Counted from the first letter of the whole stretch, positions 16,661 to 27,150 are shown. The stretch: 63,443 nt of DNA, filler included, from Octopus bimaculoides (GCF_001194135.2; 6 parts of 4 records of this genome joined end to end with filler, not necessarily neighbours in it), one strand, 5' to 3'. Numbers and translations are program-made. Notes: generated by a model not told the origin, from the letters alone.

Positions 16661-16666
16661 TTTATT
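16661..16666 (-). promoter_or_regulatory. Candidate polyadenylation signal (AATAAA) for the EH-like gene
   Basis: AATAAA on the minus strand about 120 nt after the stop codon. AT-rich context makes a chance occurrence plausible. Confidence 0.3.
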
Positions 16667-16783
16667 ATATATATATATATATATATATATCAGGAAAATA
16701 AAATAAGGGGTTTCACCATTAAGCAAAGAACATCATTAATATATTTTTTATGGTTCCTTTTTGCTGATATTCCCGTTTTTCAT

Positions 16784-17065
16784 TTATAGACCTTCGGGTA
16801 GGTTGAGATGGAGTGTGGGTGAATCTTGTGGTGTTCTTCGATGGTATTCTGGATTGATGCAGCCGACGTCGATGCTTTTACCAGCAGTTTCCACGCAGTT
16901 ATTCCCGCATTTATTAGAATCGAAGTGATAACCGTACATATCATAGCAAACTTGACATTCAAAGAGACAGCGGTAGTACAGAGGATTTCTCGGCAAAGGC
17001 TGCTCCCACCAGGCTCCTTCTAATCCTCGGCAGATAAGTGAGAAGACGGTTAGAAGTGCAAATAT
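16784..17065 (-). CDS. EH: Exon 2 of an eclosion hormone-like neuropeptide precursor (rest of signal peptide, 6-Cys core, C-terminal extension, stop)
   Basis: Acceptor atatatttccAG at 17067-17066 opens a phase-0 frame: IFALLTVFSLICRGLEGA WWEQPLPRNPLYYR CLFECQVCYDMYGYHFDSNKCGNNCVETAGKSIDVGC INPEYH RR TPQDSPTLHLNLPEGL*. Cys spacing x3,x2,x12,x3,x11 versus x3,x2,x12,x3,x10 in Manduca EH. M, G and F sit at +3, +5 and +8 after Cys3, and GK at +5/+6 after Cys5, as in EH. The exon is GC-richer than its flanks. Orthology is not tested. Confidence 0.88.
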   Translation of the reverse strand: MFALLTVFSLICRGLEGAWWEQPLPRNPLYYRCLFECQVCYDMYGYHFDSNKCGNNCVETAGKSIDVGCINPEYHRRTPQDSPTLHLNLPEGL

Positions 17066-17659
17066 CTGGAAATATATTTTTAAAAATATACAGATTTGTG
17101 AGAGATTCAGTATACTACAGTTCCCCCCACCTCATCCCGATCTGTTGTATGCTATATAGTAGAATAGGTATACAGTGAACGCAGGCATGGTCGTAGGGTC
17201 ATCGGTGCATCGAACTAAAATATCTTCTGGCATTATTCTGGACGAGTTGCATTCCTTTACAACGAGATCTATTTAGCATTTGATAAATAGAGATCAATAT
17301 CATTAGTACCAGACAAAGTACAGAGGTCAAGATAACCACCTAAAATAATTGAACATGATGCCACCAACATGAACGCAATTTAAAACCTGAATCTATATAC
17401 ATATAATTTCCGTCTATCCATTTTTATTCGCGTGTCTATATTCGTCAGAACTGTTACGTGTAGTGGGAAGAGAAACTCCAAATGCCAACTGTGTGAATCA
17501 TCAGCTTCAAACGTATAATAGATAAACATTACTACATGTACAAAGCACATGTTCTTATATTTGTAGGACCAAATATACATATGTTTTTAATATGTTTTTA
17601 ACGTTTACTCAGACCTGTCAATATATATATATATATATATATATANNNNNNNNNNNNNN

Positions 17660-17697
<38 letters not shown>

Positions 17698-17710
17698 CAT
17701 TATATCTTTC

Positions 17711-17915
17711 ATGTCAAAAAGAATGGGTCAAAAGACTCCATACTGTTGCACCTGCTCCTTCTGCTAACCAGCACAGCTGTGCATTATGCAATACAATATG
17801 CAAATCTTTGGCCACACTCAAGAGTGATACAAGGGCCTCACATTGCATCATCAATGACTCATTTCAATGATTCTTTCTAGCAATGGCTTTGCTCGTATGC
17901 GAGAAAGCAGCTGCT
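17711..17915 (+). mobile_element. RTE-type LINE 3' end fragment in the EH-like intron
   Basis: HSCALCNTICKSLATLKSDTRASH resembles the terminal CxxC..C.S..GL.SH.R.H zinc finger of RTE LINEs, followed by a short UTR. Confidence 0.5.
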
Positions 17916-18282
17916 ACATATCTATCTATATATCTATATCTATATATATATATATATATATAGACAAGGGCAAAAGAAAAAAGATTTCTATGGCATAGAA
18001 ATCTTTTTTCTTTTGCCCTTCTTTATAATTGTTTATAATTTTCACCTTTAAAGGTATTTTGATATTCTGGCCACTTTGATGAAATTTTTTGTGGAAAAAA
18101 TGTTGTCCTGTATTAGAAGTAAATATATACATATATGTGTATGCGTGTGTGTATGTATGTATGTACGTATGTATGTATGTATGTATGTATGTATGTATGA
18201 TTGACTTAAACTTTATTCAAAACCCACTGAAACAATTTCAATTAGCCACTTGTTAGATGTTAGTAATATTTCTTATTCAATA

Positions 18283-18498
18283 TAAAGCTGCGAGCTGGCA
18301 AAATCGTTAGCACGCCAGGCAAAATGCTTGACAGCATTTCATCCGTCTTGACGTTGTAAGTTCGAATTCCATCAAGATCGACTTTACTTTGATCTTTTCG
18401 GAGCCGATATTATAGGCACCAGTTGAGCACTGGGGTCAATGTAATCAACTTACCTCCTCCCTTGAAGTTGTTGGCCTTGCGCCAAAATTTGAACCAAT
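18283..18498 (+). mobile_element. SINE family B copy in the EH-like intron (antisense to the gene)
   Basis: gcgagctggcaaaatcgttagcacgccaggcaaaatgc..caccagttgagcactggggtcaatgtaatc..aaaatttgaacca. Confidence 0.8.
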
Positions 18499-18876
18499 AC
18501 TTATTATTCGATTTTTTTTCTATGTATTAAGCATATTCTAATCCATTCATTTAAGATATTAATATAGTGACATTTTTGCTTTTAAAAATTTACGCAGTAA
18601 TATGTTTACAAAAATTTATATGGCTTTTGAATTTTTATAATCATCTATTTCTGTTGATGACGTTCTCTCACAAGAGGAAGTTCTCAAATTTTACTTAAAT
18701 TTTCGCTACAAAGAAACGAAAACTTTATCTGAAAGTATCAAATCGCCACAATGAGACCATGGAGATATGGCAAGACGGAAACATTCACCCTAAATACGAA
18801 GCAGATGTTCGAAAACATCCTTTTGCTGTATAAAGAATGGTTTACGATACATATTGTTTGTAAGATAAAAAGTTTC

Positions 18877-18936
18877 TATCGTAAACGTAGGACGAACTTG
18901 AAAAATGAAAAACAAGTTCGTCCTACCTTTACGATA
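18877..18936. ncRNA. 60-nt hairpin in the EH-like intron (pre-miRNA-sized; function unproven)
   Basis: tatcgtaaacgtaggacgaacttg / aaaaatgaaaaa / caagttcgtcctacctttacgata: 24-bp arms with one mismatch and a 12-nt loop. Confidence 0.3.
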
Positions 18937-19885
18937 ATCTAAGATCTCTTCATTATTATTCACAGAGATGTAATTTTATTCACAAAAATTAAGTATACAA
19001 ATGTATTGGTAGATCAACTCAAACTAGATTGTAAAGGAAAGATTGGGTCGCGTTTATAAAAAATTGAAAAGAATGAGATGAAAAATCTAAAAAGCTTACA
19101 GGACGAAGAAAAATATTGTAAAAGAGTAATGAATCAGAAATATATTAGATAACCATAGCAATTATTCATCACTTACACCATTTAATGACGAAGAAATTAC
19201 CTGTGAATTTCGACCAAAGCTACAAACAAGTGTATCTAGGGGAAGTTAAAGGTAAAACCCTAACTAGTGTAGATGTTGTTTGTAGCAGCTTTAAGCTGAA
19301 ATCAAGTGAGTGACAAAATGGTAACGTTTTATGTCGATTCCATTTGCTCAAATACAATGGGATGCTACTGATTTGTGTCTTAGTCCACGTGAAATTCGGG
19401 TTAGTATTATTAAATATAGAAAAGATTGCGCTTTAGAAATAAAACAAATTCACTTTATCCAAGCAAATAATCTTGCGAGGTGGGAAAATGGATGCGGGAT
19501 TTAATTGAAAGAAAAAATATTGATTGATTGCCAGTTGTTTTCGGAAGTATTTGTGGTAAACTTCTCGCTATTTCAAAGCTTTTGAATTCAAAAACAAAAG
19601 AAATCGCTGAAGTTATCATGATGTTGTCGCTAAAACCGCATACAATCTTATTCGTAAATAAGGCTGGAATAAATATAATCTCCCTATTATTGAATTCACA
19701 GAAATAGCAACACAAAAAATATTAGTGGAACATTCCTTCGAAACTTTTACTAAGTGTAAGCAAAGCAGGCCCGATATATGTACCGCCATAGAAGTTAGCT
19801 ACCCTACCGATGTGAATATATCTTCAAAAATCAAAGAGAAAGAGAATTACAACAGATAAGAAGAAACCTCCATCTTCTACATATA

Positions 19886-20711
19886 CAGGGTGGGTGGAAA
19901 GTCACTAAGCATTAGAAATCACTTATAGAATTTTTAGTGTCACTGAAGTCATGAGGAAAACATTTTTTAAACAGACAACTCTAATGGAGATTTCTTATTT
20001 TCGTATAGTCTTATTTCGTATAGTAACATGCTATGAAGTGTGGAATTCCATTGTTTTGGTTCATAGATGATGGTGTGCATGGAAAGGTAAGCATGCAACA
20101 CTACGTCCGGAGACAATAAAAAGTTGTCACGCAAAGCTGATGACCACGGGTTCTGTGAACGATGCAAGAAGTGGCCGTCCAACCACATCTCGATCAACGG
20201 AGAACGTGGCAACCGTGCAGGAAATGTTAAATCGCAGTCCGCAAAAGTTAACATCTCAAGCAGCTCGTGAAAGTGGTCTAACAAGACACACAATACGTAC
20301 GGTTCTGCATAAAGAATTGAATTTTCGTCCGTGGAAACCCTATTACGTGCAGGAGCTAAAACCTGAAGACTGTGACTGCAGTAGTCTAGAAGTCCAAAAT
20401 TCCAAGAAGTCCAGATCTCACTCCATGTGGGGTTACACAAAAGAAGAGGTGTACAAGACAAAACCTCGCACACTGGAGGACTTGGAGACAGATTCAAGAG
20501 GTTCGCAATGATATCCCAGACGACGTCCTTCAGAAGGTTGTTCATTCCATATCTGGCCGTTAGAGGAAACTGGTTGACGCCACCGGTGCTACGAAGATTT
20601 ACTTTCATTTTCCCATGTAATAAACATGTATCATTTGTTCAAATAAATTTGTAAAAGGAATATGGATTTTATTACCAACTTTTAATGCCTACTTACTTTT
20701 CACCCACCCTG
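19886..20711 (+). mobile_element. Internally deleted Tc1/mariner-superfamily transposon inside the EH-like intron
   Basis: TA flanks on both sides and imperfect TIRs (CAGGGTGGGTGGAAAGT / CAGGGTGGGTGAAAAGT). It retains an HTH-type N-terminus (ARSGRPTTSRSTEN..LHKELNFRPWKP) fused to the C-terminus (WGYTKEEVYKTKPRTLEDL); the catalytic core is missing. Confidence 0.85.
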
Positions 20712-21049
20712 TAGATTATAAATCCACAGTAATAATAACAATCTGGGTAAGCTAGTATTTTCAGAATAGAAAGTCAACCAGCCAATTTGCACATTACAAA
20801 TACAATCTGTAAGTGGAATAGTAAAAATATGCAGGATTCTTCTCAAGTCTAAAATGTGAATTTGTTTTTATGATCTATATTCTAACGACAGAGCTTTGTA
20901 TTTTTGTTAGAAACCAGCTCCTTCCTGAGAGACAAAGTTCAATTAATTAAAAGCGAAGGGAATATGTATACATACATATATACGTACGAACATACATACA
21001 TACATACATACATACATACATACATGCATGCATACATACATACATACAT

Positions 21050-21212
21050 AGGCATAGACAAGGCGTACTGAGCAAGTTCGTTTCTCAGTCAAATGGTTCT
21101 GGTTCAGTACCTTTGCGCGGCATTTTGAGCAAGTGTCTTCTGCCATAACCTCGGGTTGCCCAATGGCTTGTAAATAACATTCGAATACGGGAAACATAAC
21201 CGGAGGCCTGTC
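21050..21212 (+). mobile_element. SINE family A 5' fragment in the EH-like intron
   Basis: ggttcagtacctttgcgcggcattttgagcaagtgtcttctgccataacctcggg. Confidence 0.65.
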
Positions 21213-21663
21213 GGTTATTAGCGCTTATACAAACTTTTACACACACACACACTCACACACACACACACACGCACATACACTCACGTATATGATAGTCTAG
21301 GGCATCAGACAAATATATATATATACAGTAGCTCGTGTTATTGGCTAGCAATCTCGTTGACGATGCTTTCTTTTTTGAAATCTCAGATAAATGATAGAGA
21401 AAATACTTTTGTGTATATAATCGACTAAAAGAACAGAAAGTAATACCCCAGCAGTACAATGGAATATTATCAAAAATTTCTATGTATGTATAAGTGCGTT
21501 TGTGTGTATGAATATGTATGGGTATGTGTGAGTGTGCGCGCGCGTATGTGTATGTGTGTATGCGCGCGCGCTGTGTCCTTTTGAAATCAAAACTTCTTCC
21601 TAAAAATGTAACAAGAACTACAATAGTATGAAATTTTTAAATAAATGCGGAAATATTTCTTAC

Positions 21664-21672
21664 CTTTTTCAT
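21664..21672 (-). CDS. EH: Coding part of exon 1 (Met-Lys-Lys) of the EH-like precursor
   Basis: Minus strand reads ctccaatcATGAAAAAG|GTAAGA: A at -3, a near-consensus donor, phase 0 matching the exon 2 acceptor. Joining gives MKKIFALLTVFSLICRGLEGA, a classical signal peptide. Inferred intron 17066-21663. No in-frame ATG exists in the genomic sequence just upstream of exon 2. Confidence 0.68.
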
Positions 21673-22145
21673 GATTGGAGAATAATTTAGGAAAATTAGG
21701 TAAGCAAATGGAGAAATGCTTTCGATGGAATTGGTGAATTCTCTATTTTAGAGATTTTACAAATATAATGAATTCTAGTGCCGAATATAATATATATAGA
21801 TAGCGAATCACTTACTCCATTTATTCGTATATATATATATATGTATATATATATATNNNNNNNNNNNNNNNNNNNNNNNNNNNNNNNNNNNNNNNNNNNN
21901 NNNNNNNNNNNNNNNNNNNNNNNNNNNNNNNNNNNNNNNNNNNNNNNNNNNNNNNNNNNNNNNNNNNNNNNNNNNNNNNNNNNNNNNNNNNNNNNATATT
22001 TGTATATATGTGTGTATGTATGTATGTATGTATGTATGTATGTATGTATATGTATGTATATGTATGTATGTATGTATGTATGTATATATGTATGTATGTA
22101 TAAATTATACATATTTATATATATACATATATATATGTATGAATG

Positions 22146-22228
<83 letters not shown>

Positions 22229-22799
22229 GTATGTATGTAAAATTAATGTCCATGCATAGATTTTTTATTATGTTTCTGTGTAGTATAAAGACGTGGGTGA
22301 AGTATTCATTAAAAGACAAATCTGCGTAGGCTTATAATTTTATAATCTCGAATATCGTTAGTCAGTGATATTGCAATTCTATGAATAATCTACTAAGATG
22401 TTTTTTAAGTTGTTTACCCCGAATGTCAACTGTGGGGCAGCAATTAAAGCTATTTTAGCTGTGAAATTCCCAACATTTATTCGTACATGGTCTTTTAAGA
22501 TTATATTTTTTTTATACATACTATAATCGTTGTGTTTCTTTCGCTCTTGATGAACCCAAATCCTGTAAGCATATGTTCATTGGCGTTCCAACCATAACCA
22601 TCACGTTTCTATGTATCACGTCCACTACGTTTTCCATTCTGCCCCTTCTTTTTAATAACGAAAGTGTGTCTTGGAGACTTTTGCTGCTGTTTCTAGCAAG
22701 CTCAATTAGGTCGAGCAAGCCTTATAAAGATCCCTCTTTGGATCGTCTACAGTGCAGTGTAGTACTTAATATTAGTAGTAATGTTTTTCTTTTTATTTG

Positions 22800-23270: not shown

Positions 23271-23507
23271 TTTTTGTATACCAGGTTTTATACTGTCCGC
23301 TGTATTCTCCTTTAAGTCTTGCTTTATTTATTTCTAGCAAGCCGAGCAACCAAATTACTAAGTTTTCATTTCACATTTATGTAAAGTACGTGTGCGCGTT
23401 TGTATACATGCAAACATACATACAAAATACATACAAACATATGTGTGTGTGTATGTGTATGTGTGTGAGTGTGTGTGTGTATGTGAGTGTGTGTATGTGT
23501 AGACTTG

Positions 23508-23551
<44 letters not shown>

Positions 23552-24925
23552 ATACTTCTAATGTTAGCCTTAAATGTTATGAAGGGAATTCACTGAAGCT
23601 TCACCAGTTCTTTACTCTAACTCTAGAGGGGAGACAGCTTATCTGGAGACTAAACCCATCCTTTTTGGGATTTCCTTCCACATCCCATACATAACCAAAA
23701 CTCATAACCCAAATCCCTCAAGTCGCTCGCTTGTAGTTGCGCTTCGGTAGTTCAAAGAAAGAAAAGTACGTCCTAAATGCTTGAAGAACGCTTGCAAAAT
23801 GGACGACTTTTACTCACCACCAAAATTCCTTCTAGACATATTTCAAAACGCAAATTATACTTCCGTGCATCGCACAACTTTCAAGATTTCTCACATCCCA
23901 AATCGCTGCCGATCCTTTTCAGCCCAATACCGAAATGATCTCAACTAGCTTAGTGTAATTCTTCTTTTCCTCATTTGTCGACTGTGATAATTTTGTAAGC
24001 GGTGTTACGACAGGAAAGACTTTGACACGTTCTGCCCTTTTCTAGCCAACTTTACACCACACACACACCAGGTAAAATTCTTCCAAAGTTTTCTCCGCTC
24101 CAACTAGGCTATTGCTTTAGACCAACGAGACCATTGGCTTTGAAAGTTTCTTTTCCAGTACTCTGAAAGAATGCATTCTAAGTTAGGATCTACCTATCCT
24201 AACCAAACTCTTCAATCTTTCTCTTTATATATAAGGACATATCTCAATTTCCGGAAATGCACCACAGTGAAACCCACTACCACAAAGGAAAACTTAAATC
24301 ACGGCAACTGTCTGCTGGTCGTTCTTACAAAGATAAAGGAGATAGTCATTAGCAACTATATTCTCAATATCTTGAATACCTTTTTCTCCCTAGTGACCAC
24401 CAGTACAGCTTAAGTAATAACAAATTTAGTGGAAACCGACACTTGATTTTGAGAGATTTGCTGAAAACACGTAAAATAGCGCTTGACTGTGTCAGGCAGT
24501 CAACATCCTAGCTAAGCCACCCGCCTATTGGCTGCTTGTGTTAATTGTCTCTTACAATGGAGGCTTCTAATCAAATTTCACCAGCACGGCGTGTGTTGAG
24601 GAGGTTCTCCCTCTCTTTTTTCTCTCTCACCCTCTCTAACATATATTGCATTGATTATAGTGTGTCCAGAGTTTGGTTTTTGCCCTCCACACTATTCGTC
24701 TTATATACAACTTACTATCATCCTACAACGCATACTTCTATTCATACGATATCATCGGATTTTTCCCTAATCTTCTGCACCCAAGATTCTTCAATATACA
24801 ACTTGGACATTTCACACTAAACCTGTATTTCCTCCATCAAGTCCTCGAAACATTCTCCAGTAGGATTATGACAATCATACCTCCTTCAACAACACAAAGA
24901 CAATTATCACACAAACACACAAACA

Positions 24926-24984
<59 letters not shown>

Positions 24985-26626
24985 CAAGAAAATAATCATA
25001 TACCTCATTAAACTGAAACCTCTAGGTTGCTACTAAGTATCCCTATACTTGACAATATCTCCTGACAATCTTACTAGGTCAGCTGACCTTCATCTCTTCA
25101 GTGCTTGATAATACTTGACCCTCTAACAGTTACTCATATAAAGTTAGAGACCTACAGTGGAAGACTGTTTTCCTATCTGAAACGGCGCCGCTACTACATC
25201 TACTTAATATCCCAGATCGCATCCTCGAAGAGTCTATCTGACTAATTGGGATGAAATTACTCACCAACTTACTTCAATTTCTGGCCTTCAAATATACTGT
25301 CTCCTCACTACTCCTATTATTGTGACTACAGTGGCCTCTACTCTTCATATTTATCCGGTCTCGTACCACCTCTACTCAATCCTTGCTCATCACTTATTTT
25401 TCTTACTCATATCGTGTCCTCCATCCCGTAGACTGTGCACTAATTTTCCGTCCTATCCTTTATCCCCAAAACTTTATCCCTCTGAAATTACCCCATGTTT
25501 TCCCGCAGCCTTGAACTTGAAATTCAATGAGGAAAAGTATCAATGGTATCGAAATCATGTTACGAAGTGCCTTTAAAGGTCATGACTCTTCAAAGGTACT
25601 TTCGTTCAAACCAAATCATAAAAAAAAATTTACAGATATGTTTCTATACAAATAGTTTGAAGAACAATTATATTTGTAAAACAAGAAAGAAAGGAGGTAA
25701 CATGGTGAGTGAATAATTCAACATTACATTAACGACATGTAATACGTATACCTCATTCTGAATCAGGAATTAAGCATACAAAATTGTACGTTGTTATTAT
25801 TTAATTTGAGCAACCTTTAAATGTTGATCAGAGATTACCTGCACAATGTAATAGTGATAGAATATTTATATTACACGTCAGTTGTTAGTTTTATCCTAAC
25901 CCAGTAGATCAATTTGAATTTTGCTGAGCGGATCAAGTTCTAAACTAAAGAAATATTTTCTATACTCGCAACATCTGTTTCATTTCATTTTATCATGTAT
26001 ATCTGTATTTTGTGGCAACTATACACATGGGTACAGTGCCAATCTTTTAGGCACCAGAGTTGATAAAAAAAAAAACATTACTAATTTCTTTCTCTGAATA
26101 CATGTGACATCCAACAATCACTGATAATTAAGATATTAATGACGTTATAGCTTATCGCGCCACAGCACTGTTCCAAAAGTCTCACCCATCCCGTCTAAAG
26201 AACGGATACTGCAATTACTTAGGATTCAAAGGCTATTTAATATCTTGCCAAAACAAAACAGTTAAGAGATTTATATAGAGTAGGGGTACATATTTTAAAG
26301 TAACACCTTGAACTTCTACTGTCCAAGGTCCCTGGTGAACTTATATCATAACAAAAAATTCAAAAGAATTTTATNNNNNNNNNNNNNNNNNNNNNNNNNN
26401 NNNNNNNNNNNNNNNNNNNNNNNNNNNNNNNNNNNNNNNNNNNNNNNNNNNNNNNNNNNNNNNNNNNNNNNNNNNNNNNNNNNNNNNNNNNNNNNNNNNN
26501 NNNNNNNNNNNNNNNNNNNNNNNNNNNNNNNNNNNNNNNNNNNNNNNNNNNNNNNNNNNNNNNNNNNNNNNNNNNNNNNNNNNNNNNNNNNNNNNNNNNN
26601 NNNNNNNNNNNNNNNNNACGCCCACG

Positions 26627-26884: not shown

Positions 26885-27150
<266 letters not shown>

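What the first reader, a model, noticed from the sequence alone, without database searches (positions are those of the whole stretch)
16784..21672. Eclosion hormone-like neuropeptide gene in an octopus-like (non-moulting) genome
Seen in sequence: the spliced minus-strand frame is MKKIFALLTVFSLICRGLEGA-WWEQPLPRNPLYYRCLFECQVCYDMYGYHFDSNKCGNNCVETAGKSIDVGCINPEYH-RR-TPQDSPTLHLNLPEGL (96 aa). Established: insect EH has six Cys spaced x3,x2,x12,x3,x10 forming three disulfides and acts through a receptor guanylyl cyclase, and EH-like sequences have been reported outside arthropods. This peptide has x3,x2,x12,x3,x11 and conserves M, G, F and GK at the same offsets. Inference: a secreted cGMP-signalling hormone with an unknown role in a cephalopod (hatching, skin or sucker shedding and maturation are speculative options). 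The ORF track shows only a TTG-started 70-aa piece, so automated annotation could miss it.
Basis: partly seen in the sequence, partly recalled or inferred. Interest (0 to 1): 0.85.

Follow-up and report, generated by a model that had tools for sequence, protein, structure and literature searches.

The report
Octopus eclosion-hormone-like gene, already published
The window holds a real, intact two-exon octopus gene for a secreted eclosion-hormone-type peptide, but this exact 96-residue protein was listed as the Octopus bimaculoides eclosion-hormone orthologue in a 2019 paper and gene models for it already exist, so the finding is correct but not new.

Summary
On the minus strand, ATGAAAAAG|gtaaga (21672-21664) splices to ttccag|ATA...

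- **Assembly gap:** 17646-17659 lies inside the intron, 581 nt from the acceptor, so it cannot affect the frame.
- **Family membership:** the protein passes Pfam's curated Eclosion threshold (28.7 bits against 25). Its Cys spacing is 3,2,12,3,11, against 3,2,12,3,10 in arthropod EH.
- **Selection:** against Octopus vulgaris the CDS has 6 differences, all synonymous. The splice sites are conserved.
- **Orthologues:** intact copies exist in Argonauta, in Idiosepius (transcriptome-derived) and in a further cephalopod.
- **Not new:** the identical sequence is printed as "octopusBimaculoides.Ocbimv22037767 MolluscaCephalopoda" in the EH-ligand source data of de Oliveira et al. 2019 (eLife, PMC6660194). 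Unnamed gene models exist in O. vulgaris (CAI9729900.1) and Argonauta hians, so annotation does not miss it. EH in non-moulting animals has been established since 2017-2019.
- **Still open:** the cGMP/receptor guanylyl cyclase mechanism is inferred only. No cephalopod sequence is in the published EH-receptor tree, and my receptor search was inconclusive.
- **Minor points:** cephalopods carry a single-domain form of a precursor that has two domains in other lophotrochozoans. It ends in a conserved 16-aa C-terminal tail.

Interest is low.

The parts
21664..21672 (-). Coding part of exon 1: ATG AAA AAG (Met-Lys-Lys), phase 0, followed by donor gtaaga at 21663-21658. The 5' UTR extent is unknown; an assembly gap at 21857-21995 lies about 185 nt upstream.
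   Evidence: The same 9 nt and the same donor are present in O. vulgaris L001 8001-8009. The Idiosepius transcriptome protein and the Argonauta gene model both start M-N-K plus 18 signal-peptide residues.
17066..21663 (-). Single intron, 4598 nt as assembled. It is rich in microsatellites and holds the assembly gap and a transposon relic.
   Evidence: It is collinear with the O. vulgaris intron (4113 nt) at 83-92% identity, apart from lineage-specific blocks.
17646..17659 (.). Assembly gap (14 N) between a (TA)n and an (ATT)n run. It is intronic, 581 nt upstream of the exon-2 acceptor.
   Evidence: No coding sequence crosses it. Sequence may be missing here, because O. vulgaris has 1.7 kb with no counterpart in the window.
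16784..17065 (-). Exon 2 coding part: residues 4-96 plus stop TAA (16786-16784), preceded by acceptor ttccag.
   Evidence: The acceptor is conserved in O. vulgaris. A further cephalopod contig (L002) has an acceptor tttcag at the same position, 18 codons before the mature N-terminus.
17012..17065 (-). Exon-2 part of the signal peptide (residues 4-21, IFALLTVFSLICRGLEGA). With MKK it forms n-, h- and c-regions; the inferred cleavage is after Ala21.
   Evidence: Hydropathy maximum of 2.59 at residues 5-15. This segment is only 17-24% identical to decapodiform orthologues, against 70-77% for the mature part, which is typical of a signal peptide. No SignalP was available.
16859..16969 (-). EH core, Cys36 to Cys72: C-x3-C-x2-C-x12-C-x3-C-x11-C. 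The Pfam Eclosion match covers residues 36-68.
   Evidence: In the AF2 model two helices carry Cys1-3 and Cys4-5, with pLDDT above 90.
16835..16840 (-). Arg79-Arg80, a possible dibasic processing site.
   Evidence: It aligns with the KR inter-domain cleavage site of two-domain EH precursors. It is conserved in Argonauta and L002 but reads RI in Idiosepius. Cleavage is an inference.
16787..16834 (-). C-terminal 16-residue tail TPQDSPTLHLNLPEGL, conserved across cephalopods and predicted to be disordered.
   Evidence: 76-82% identity to Argonauta, Idiosepius and L002; pLDDT about 50.
16661..16666 (-). AATAAA polyadenylation signal, 118 nt after the stop. The intervening 3' UTR is 117/118 identical to O. 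vulgaris.
19881..20716 (.). TIR-bounded element, probably a decayed Tc1/mariner-type transposon, inside the intron. It is not part of the gene's function.
   Evidence: 51-nt inverted arms. The block 19371-21066 is absent from the O. vulgaris intron. There is no significant Pfam hit.

Best explanation
This is the Octopus orthologue of the six-cysteine eclosion-hormone (EH) type prohormone gene. The species is most likely O. bimaculoides, gene model Ocbimv22037767.

It is a two-exon gene on the minus strand. A 3-codon first coding exon (MKK) is spliced over a 4.6-kb intron to an exon that encodes the rest of the signal peptide, a conserved N-terminal stretch, one EH domain with six Cys, an RR site and a conserved 16-residue tail.

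Shown here: the gene structure, Pfam family membership, the Cys framework, purifying selection and conservation across octopods and decapodiforms.

Inferred:
- The signal peptide is removed after Ala21.
- The peptide folds as a disulfide-stapled helical hairpin with three disulfides, as in insect EH.
- It is secreted as a neurohormone or paracrine factor.
- It acts on a membrane guanylyl cyclase of the EH-receptor clade to raise cGMP.

Its physiological role in cephalopods is unknown. A role in hatching or life-stage transitions is the current hypothesis in the literature for ecdysis-related peptides in non-moulters.
For: - **Translation and splice sites:**
- **Pfam:** PF04736 Eclosion scores 28.7 bits (GA 25), E=1.1e-6. 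Orthologues from Idiosepius (25.3) and L002 (26.6) also pass.
- **Cys framework:** spacing and M/G/F/GK offsets match arthropod and onychophoran EH sequences taken from the eLife supplement.
- **Published identity:** the identical sequence is listed among EH ligands as octopusBimaculoides.Ocbimv22037767. The paper states that EH ligand orthologues in lophotrochozoans carry the six conserved Cys.
- **Gene models:** there is a 100% identical O. vulgaris model with a precomputed Pfam Eclosion hit.
- **Selection:** 6 of 6 CDS differences against O. vulgaris are synonymous, dS about 0.10, dN 0.
- **Orthologues:** the Argonauta hians 96-aa orthologue is intact. The intron position is conserved in another cephalopod.
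- **Structure:** AF2 gives two confident helices that carry the CxxxCxxC and CxxxC motifs.
- **Nearest relatives:** outside cephalopods these are two-domain EH-type precursors of an annelid, a clam and a priapulid.
Against: - **No octopus transcript:** none was available here. The only contig encoding the exact protein is the O. vulgaris genome.
- **Last Cys loop:** it is one residue longer than in arthropods.
- **Disulfides:** connectivity could not be checked because no coordinates are returned, and no EH structure exists in the PDB.
- **Receptor:** no cephalopod EH-receptor guanylyl cyclase is in the published receptor tree. None was found with the Lottia EH-receptor ectodomain as query, although that search also failed to return Lottia's own protein, so it is uninformative.
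- **RR site:** it is not conserved in Idiosepius.
Confidence: 0.9

Rival explanations
1. The gene encodes an EH-fold peptide that no longer uses the canonical EH receptor. Cephalopods would have lost the EH-receptor guanylyl cyclase, and the peptide, or its conserved 16-residue tail released at RR, would act through another receptor.
For: No Octopus or Idiosepius sequence appears in the published EH-receptor data set, although both proteomes were screened and yielded bursicon receptors. The tail T81-L96 is as conserved as the EH core, and RR aligns with a genuine KR cleavage site in the two-domain relatives.
Against: Absence from one 2019 data set built on a fragmented gene set is weak evidence. 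My own search could not retrieve long receptors at all. Ligand-receptor co-occurrence is the rule in other molluscs. The RR site reads RI in Idiosepius.
Confidence: 0.12
2. The exon-1 assignment is wrong and the true start lies in another upstream exon, possibly hidden in an assembly gap, so the N-terminus differs.
For: Exon 1 contributes only 9 coding nt, which could arise by chance. No octopus transcript was examined. Gaps lie at 17646-17659 and 21857-21995.
Against: The ATGAAAAAG|gtaaga sequence is conserved in O. vulgaris. Independent gene models in three octopods give M-[KN]-K plus the same exon 2. The transcriptome-derived Idiosepius protein is also 96 aa, with MNK plus 18 residues before the mature N-terminus. 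The acceptor position is conserved in L002.
Confidence: 0.04
3. This is a convergent cysteine-rich secreted peptide (CHH/ITP-like, toxin or antimicrobial) rather than a true EH homologue.
For: The peptide is short, so similarity rests on about 33 aligned residues. The Pfam score is only 3.7 bits above the threshold. There are no PDB fold matches.
Against: Only Eclosion passes in Pfam, with no CHH/ITP family hit even at E up to 10. All six Cys plus M, G, F, G-K and C-N-N-P are shared with arthropod and onychophoran EH. A graded series of intermediates exists in annelids, bivalves, scaphopods and a priapulid. It was placed among EH ligands in a family-wide cluster analysis.
Confidence: 0.03
4. 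This is an unexpressed or decaying gene copy.
For: No octopus expression data were examined here. The paralarval octopus brain atlas text mentions ccap and bursicon but not EH.
Against: dN is 0 against dS of about 0.10 relative to O. vulgaris. The ORF is intact in four cephalopod lineages. The 3' UTR and polyA signal are conserved.
Confidence: 0.01

Closest known systems
Octopus bimaculoides Ocbimv22037767, listed as an EH ligand orthologue in de Oliveira et al. 2019, eLife 8:e46113 (Figure 2-source data 3); also O. vulgaris CAI9729900.1 / A0AA36B8R3
   Same: It is 100% identical over all 96 residues. The exon structure is the same as in the O. vulgaris locus.
   Different: Nothing at the protein level. 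The window differs from the O. vulgaris DNA by 6 synonymous sites and by intron indels.
Arthropod eclosion hormone (Pfam PF04736; e.g. Musca, Tribolium, Blattella, Nilaparvata sequences)
   Same: Signal peptide plus a single EH domain. Six Cys with spacing 3,2,12,3. Conserved M, (Y/F)G, (H/Y)F and G-K/R, and C-N-N-P after the last Cys as in hemimetabolous insects. It passes the Pfam gathering score.
   Different: The last loop has 11 residues, not 10. It carries a 14-residue conserved N-terminal extension (WWEQPLPRNPLYYR) and a 16-residue conserved tail after RR. The host does not moult. The receptor and function are untested.
Two-domain EH-type precursors of other lophotrochozoans (oyster Cragi-EH1/2, PMC8398477; Ennucula, Gadila, Owenia, Ruditapes; also Priapulus)
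   Same: These are the closest relatives outside cephalopods by exhaustive HMMER search. They share G-x-S-I-D and the (Y/F)-H motif after Cys6, and a basic pair at the same alignment column.
   Different: They carry two EH domains separated by KR and have spacing 3,2,13,3,11. The cephalopod gene has one domain followed by a Cys-free tail.
Second cephalopod EH-like paralogue (Ocbimv22024629 / Idiosepius 228468), the eight-Cys molluscan group
   Same: It is listed in the same EH-ligand data set and shares the CxxxCxxC...CxxxC core.
   Different: It has eight Cys with a CC doublet and a longer last loop (14 residues). It does not hit Pfam Eclosion even at E up to 1. It is not encoded in this window.

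Membership tests
Eclosion hormone (Pfam PF04736) | Match to the family HMM above the curated gathering score | tested here: met
   28.7 bits against GA 25, E=1.1e-6, residues 36-68. Orthologues score 25.3 and 26.6 bits.
Eclosion hormone (Pfam PF04736) | Six conserved Cys with spacing C-x3-C-x2-C-x12-C-x3-C-x10-C | tested here: met
   Spacing is 3,2,12,3,11. All six Cys align with those of five arthropod EHs (four insects and a springtail) and one onychophoran EH, and the last loop is one residue longer.
Eclosion hormone (Pfam PF04736) | Secreted prepropeptide with an N-terminal signal peptide | tested here: met
   There is a basic MKK, an 11-residue hydrophobic core (KD 2.59) and Ala at -1. 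The segment evolves fast, unlike the mature part. No dedicated predictor was available, so the cleavage site is inferred from orthologue alignment.
Eclosion hormone (Pfam PF04736) | Three disulfides Cys1-Cys5, Cys2-Cys4, Cys3-Cys6 (connectivity recalled from Manduca EH, own knowledge) | not testable with these tools
   The AF2 model puts Cys1-3 on helix 10-29 and Cys4-5 on helix 32-41 of the mature peptide, which is compatible with that connectivity. No coordinates are returned and no EH structure is in the PDB.
Eclosion hormone (Pfam PF04736) | Groups with EH ligands in a family-wide analysis | tested here: met
   The identical sequence is included in the published EH-ligand cluster data set. 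The nearest non-cephalopod relatives in 1.84 billion representatives are EH-type precursors.
Eclosion hormone (Pfam PF04736) | Acts through a receptor guanylyl cyclase of the EH-receptor clade, raising cGMP | tested here: inconclusive
   No cephalopod is in the published receptor tree. A search with the Lottia EH-receptor ectodomain found no cephalopod-named protein, but it also returned nothing longer than 776 aa and missed Lottia's own protein. A biochemical assay is needed.
Eclosion hormone (Pfam PF04736) | Expressed as mRNA or peptide in neurosecretory cells | not tested
   No octopus transcript data can be reached with these tools. The Idiosepius orthologue comes from a transcriptome.
Two-domain lophotrochozoan EH precursor (Cragi-EH type) | Two EH domains separated by a dibasic site | tested here: not met
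   There is one EH domain only. RR aligns with the inter-domain KR, but a 16-residue Cys-free tail follows.
CHH/ITP/MIH neurohormones | Match to the crustacean neurohormone family model and its Cys pattern | tested here: not met
   No such Pfam family is reported even at E up to 10.

The most novel reading that the evidence does not exclude
Cephalopods reduced the ancestral two-domain lophotrochozoan EH precursor to a single EH domain plus a strongly conserved 16-residue C-terminal peptide (TPQDSPTLHLNLPEGL) released at RR. Because no EH-receptor guanylyl cyclase has been reported from any cephalopod, the hormone and/or this tail peptide may signal through a different, unidentified receptor.
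Probability: 0.12. Interest if true: 0.5.

Novelty: already known. Interest (0 to 1): 0.15.

Why it matters
EH in non-moulting animals is relevant to how the ecdysis peptide cascade was assembled from older signalling modules. That point has been made in print since 2017-2019, and this very sequence is part of that evidence.

What remains open, and would matter, is functional. It is not known where and when octopus EH is expressed, whether a cephalopod EH-receptor guanylyl cyclase exists, and what the conserved C-terminal tail does. Public databases still carry the protein without a name ('---NA---', 'hypothetical protein'), so a naming fix would be a small practical gain.

Tried and rejected
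- **Unmasked blastn of the window against O. vulgaris:** it was swamped by microsatellite hits. I repeated it with masking.
- **PDB sequence search and Foldseek of the AF2 model against the PDB:** neither gave a significant match, only non-significant helical-hairpin subunits of complex I. No EH reference structure exists, so a 'structural match' cannot be tested.
- **Receptor search with the Lottia EH-receptor ectodomain:** it returned 50 hits, none from a cephalopod. No hit was longer than 776 aa and Lottia's own protein was missing, so I rejected it as evidence of absence.
- **Zieger et al. 2021 (Curr Biol):** the paper is not held.
- **Pfam on the intronic ORFs 20140-20511 (+) and 19967-20608 (-):** nothing significant.
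- **tRNA and Rfam scans of the piece:** nothing found.
- **Repeat search:** only microsatellites.
- **Weak tblastn hit of the EH protein at window 17991-18107 (E=0.03):** this is translated (TG/TA)n microsatellite, not a second EH exon.
- **Second 96-residue gene called downstream in the O. vulgaris locus:** it shows no EH similarity and lies outside this piece.


Full report
**Observation.** On the minus strand of the piece, the sequence reads ATGAAAAAG followed by gtaaga at 21672-21658. At 17071-17065 it reads ttccag|A, and an open frame then runs to TAA at 16786-16784. The exon-2 frame extends just 22 codons upstream of the acceptor to a stop and contains no ATG. A signal peptide with an initiator Met therefore requires the splice.

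**Assembly gap.** There are three N runs in the piece: 17646-17659, 21857-21995 and 26375-26617. The first lies in the intron, 581 nt upstream of the acceptor, between a (TA)n and an (ATT)n run. I compared it with the orthologous Octopus vulgaris locus (L001, OX597824.1). The 3' flank 17645-17592 matches L001 11639-11692. The 5' flank 17660-17917 has no counterpart there, and L001 9905-11638 has no counterpart in the window. Continuity across the gap is therefore not established and sequence may be missing. No coding sequence crosses the gap, so the frame question does not arise.

**Species and locus.** The window is collinear with O. vulgaris chromosome OX597824.1 over the whole piece at 83-93% identity. 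It is therefore from a congener rather than O. vulgaris itself. The identical protein is the O. bimaculoides model Ocbimv22037767, which makes O. bimaculoides the likely source; this is an inference.

**Is the gene real?** Several lines of evidence agree.
- The CDS differs from O. vulgaris at 6 of 291 positions, all third-position synonymous changes. With 62 synonymous and 226 non-synonymous sites, the chance of this under neutrality is about 1e-4. The adjacent intron is 92% identical.
- The donor and acceptor are conserved.
- Argonauta hians has an intact 96-aa model, 87% identical over the mature part and starting MNK.
- The transcriptome-derived Idiosepius notoides protein is also 96 aa and starts MNK, followed by 18 residues before the mature N-terminus.
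- A genomic contig from another cephalopod sequencing run (L002, ERR3431203) has a tttcag acceptor exactly 18 codons before the mature N-terminus.
- The three-codon first exon and the intron position are therefore conserved across octopods and decapodiforms.
- An AATAAA lies 118 nt after the stop, and the intervening 3' UTR is 117/118 identical to O. vulgaris.

**Family.** Pfam reports only Eclosion (PF04736), at 28.7 bits against a curated cut-off of 25, E=1.1e-6, covering residues 36-68. The Idiosepius and L002 orthologues also pass, at 25.3 and 26.6 bits. I used sequences printed in the eLife supplement rather than memory to check the cysteine spacing. Four insect, one springtail and one onychophoran EH have spacing 3,2,12,3,10. 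The three cephalopod sequences have 3,2,12,3,11. The bivalve, scaphopod and annelid six-Cys forms have 3,2,13,3,11. M, (Y/F)G, (H/Y)F, G-K and C-N-N-P are shared with arthropod EH.

An exhaustive HMMER scan of 1.84 billion representatives found only 13 clusters at E<=1e-3. Most of them are two-domain precursors, from Owenia, Ruditapes, Priapulus and unnamed assemblies. In the alignment, the cephalopod RR falls in the column of their inter-domain KR.

An AF2 model of the mature peptide has mean pLDDT 79 and a core above 90. Helices at 10-29 and 32-41 carry Cys1-3 and Cys4-5, and the tail is disordered. No PDB sequence or fold relative exists, so the disulfide pattern cannot be verified here.

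**Comparison with what is known.**
- De Oliveira et al. 2019 (eLife, PMC6660194) screened 39 genomes and 57 transcriptomes. They reported EH ligands in cnidarians, acoels, hemichordates, molluscs, annelids, nemerteans, phoronids and onychophorans.
- Their EH-ligand source file prints '>octopusBimaculoides.Ocbimv22037767 MolluscaCephalopoda' with exactly this 96-residue sequence. It sits next to the Idiosepius orthologue and a second, eight-Cys paralogue, Ocbimv22024629.
- Their companion paper lists EH orthologues among eumetazoan peptides in molluscs.
- The oyster paper describes the two-ligand Cragi-EH precursor.
- Echinoderm EH was reported in 2017.
- The protein is in NCBI and UniProt as an unnamed O. 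vulgaris model with a precomputed Pfam Eclosion hit.

The finding is therefore correct but already known. The claim that annotation would miss the gene is not borne out; only the naming is missing.

**Mechanism.** The shown steps are the gene structure, family membership and selective constraint. The inferred steps are signal-peptide cleavage after Ala21, three disulfides, secretion, and action on an EH-clade receptor guanylyl cyclase that raises cGMP.

The last step is the weakest. The published EH-receptor tree contains Lottia, Crassostrea, Patinopecten, Laevipilina and Gymnomenia but no cephalopod. My search with the Lottia ectodomain returned no cephalopod protein. It also returned nothing above 776 aa and did not find Lottia's own receptor, so it says nothing either way.

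It reads RI in Idiosepius, however. The 16-residue tail is 76-82% conserved, which argues that it has a function, either as part of the hormone or as a separate peptide.

For physiological role, the octopus brain atlas notes ccap and bursicon and cites a hatching or life-stage-transition hypothesis, but it does not mention EH.

**Verdict.** This is a real, constrained EH-type prohormone gene that is already published and modelled. Interest is low. The residual open points are the cephalopod receptor, the tail peptide and expression.

Noticed in passing
window 19881-20716 (within block 19371-21066): A TIR-bounded element of about 836 bp sits inside the EH intron. It has 51-nt inverted arms (76% complementary) whose ends read CAGGGTGGGTG..., with TA on both sides, and an internal HTH-like ORF fragment. 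It is probably a decayed Tc1/mariner-type transposon. The surrounding 1.7-kb block is absent from the O. vulgaris intron, so it is a lineage-specific insertion or deletion.
   Followed up: partly
window 16666-16783 (minus strand): The 118 nt between the stop codon and the AATAAA signal are 117/118 identical to O. vulgaris, with 6 gap columns. The adjacent intron is 92% identical and the CDS 97.9%. This is a strongly conserved 3' UTR and possibly a regulatory element.
   Followed up: partly
window 16787-16840 (residues 79-96): RR aligns with the KR inter-domain cleavage site of the two-domain EH precursors of annelids and bivalves. The following Cys-free 16-residue tail is 76-82% conserved across cephalopods, yet it is predicted to be disordered. 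The cephalopod gene looks like a single-domain derivative of a two-domain ancestor.
   Followed up: partly
window 17592-17918 vs L001 9905-11692: Around the 14-N gap the two Octopus species are not collinear. 258 nt on one side of the gap are specific to the window, and 1.7 kb of (TA)n arrays plus unique sequence are specific to O. vulgaris. The gap may hide more sequence than its nominal length.
   Followed up: partly
published EH-receptor tree (eLife 2019, Figure 2-source data 3): No Octopus or Idiosepius sequence appears among the EH-receptor guanylyl cyclases, although both species contributed EH ligands and bursicon receptors to the same study.
   Followed up: partly
window 17915-18230, 20960-21060, 21230-21290, 21480-21590, 21996-22290, 23390-23520, 24900-24990, 26990-27150: The intron and the upstream region are dense in (TA)n, (TATG)n/(CATA)n and (CA)n microsatellites. 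These produce many spurious Cys/Tyr-rich ORFs and flank all three assembly gaps.
   Followed up: no
L001 17668-20404 (O. vulgaris, outside this piece): A second gene with a 96-residue product is called about 5 kb downstream on the opposite strand in O. vulgaris. It has no EH similarity by tblastn and no Pfam hit on record.
   Followed up: partly
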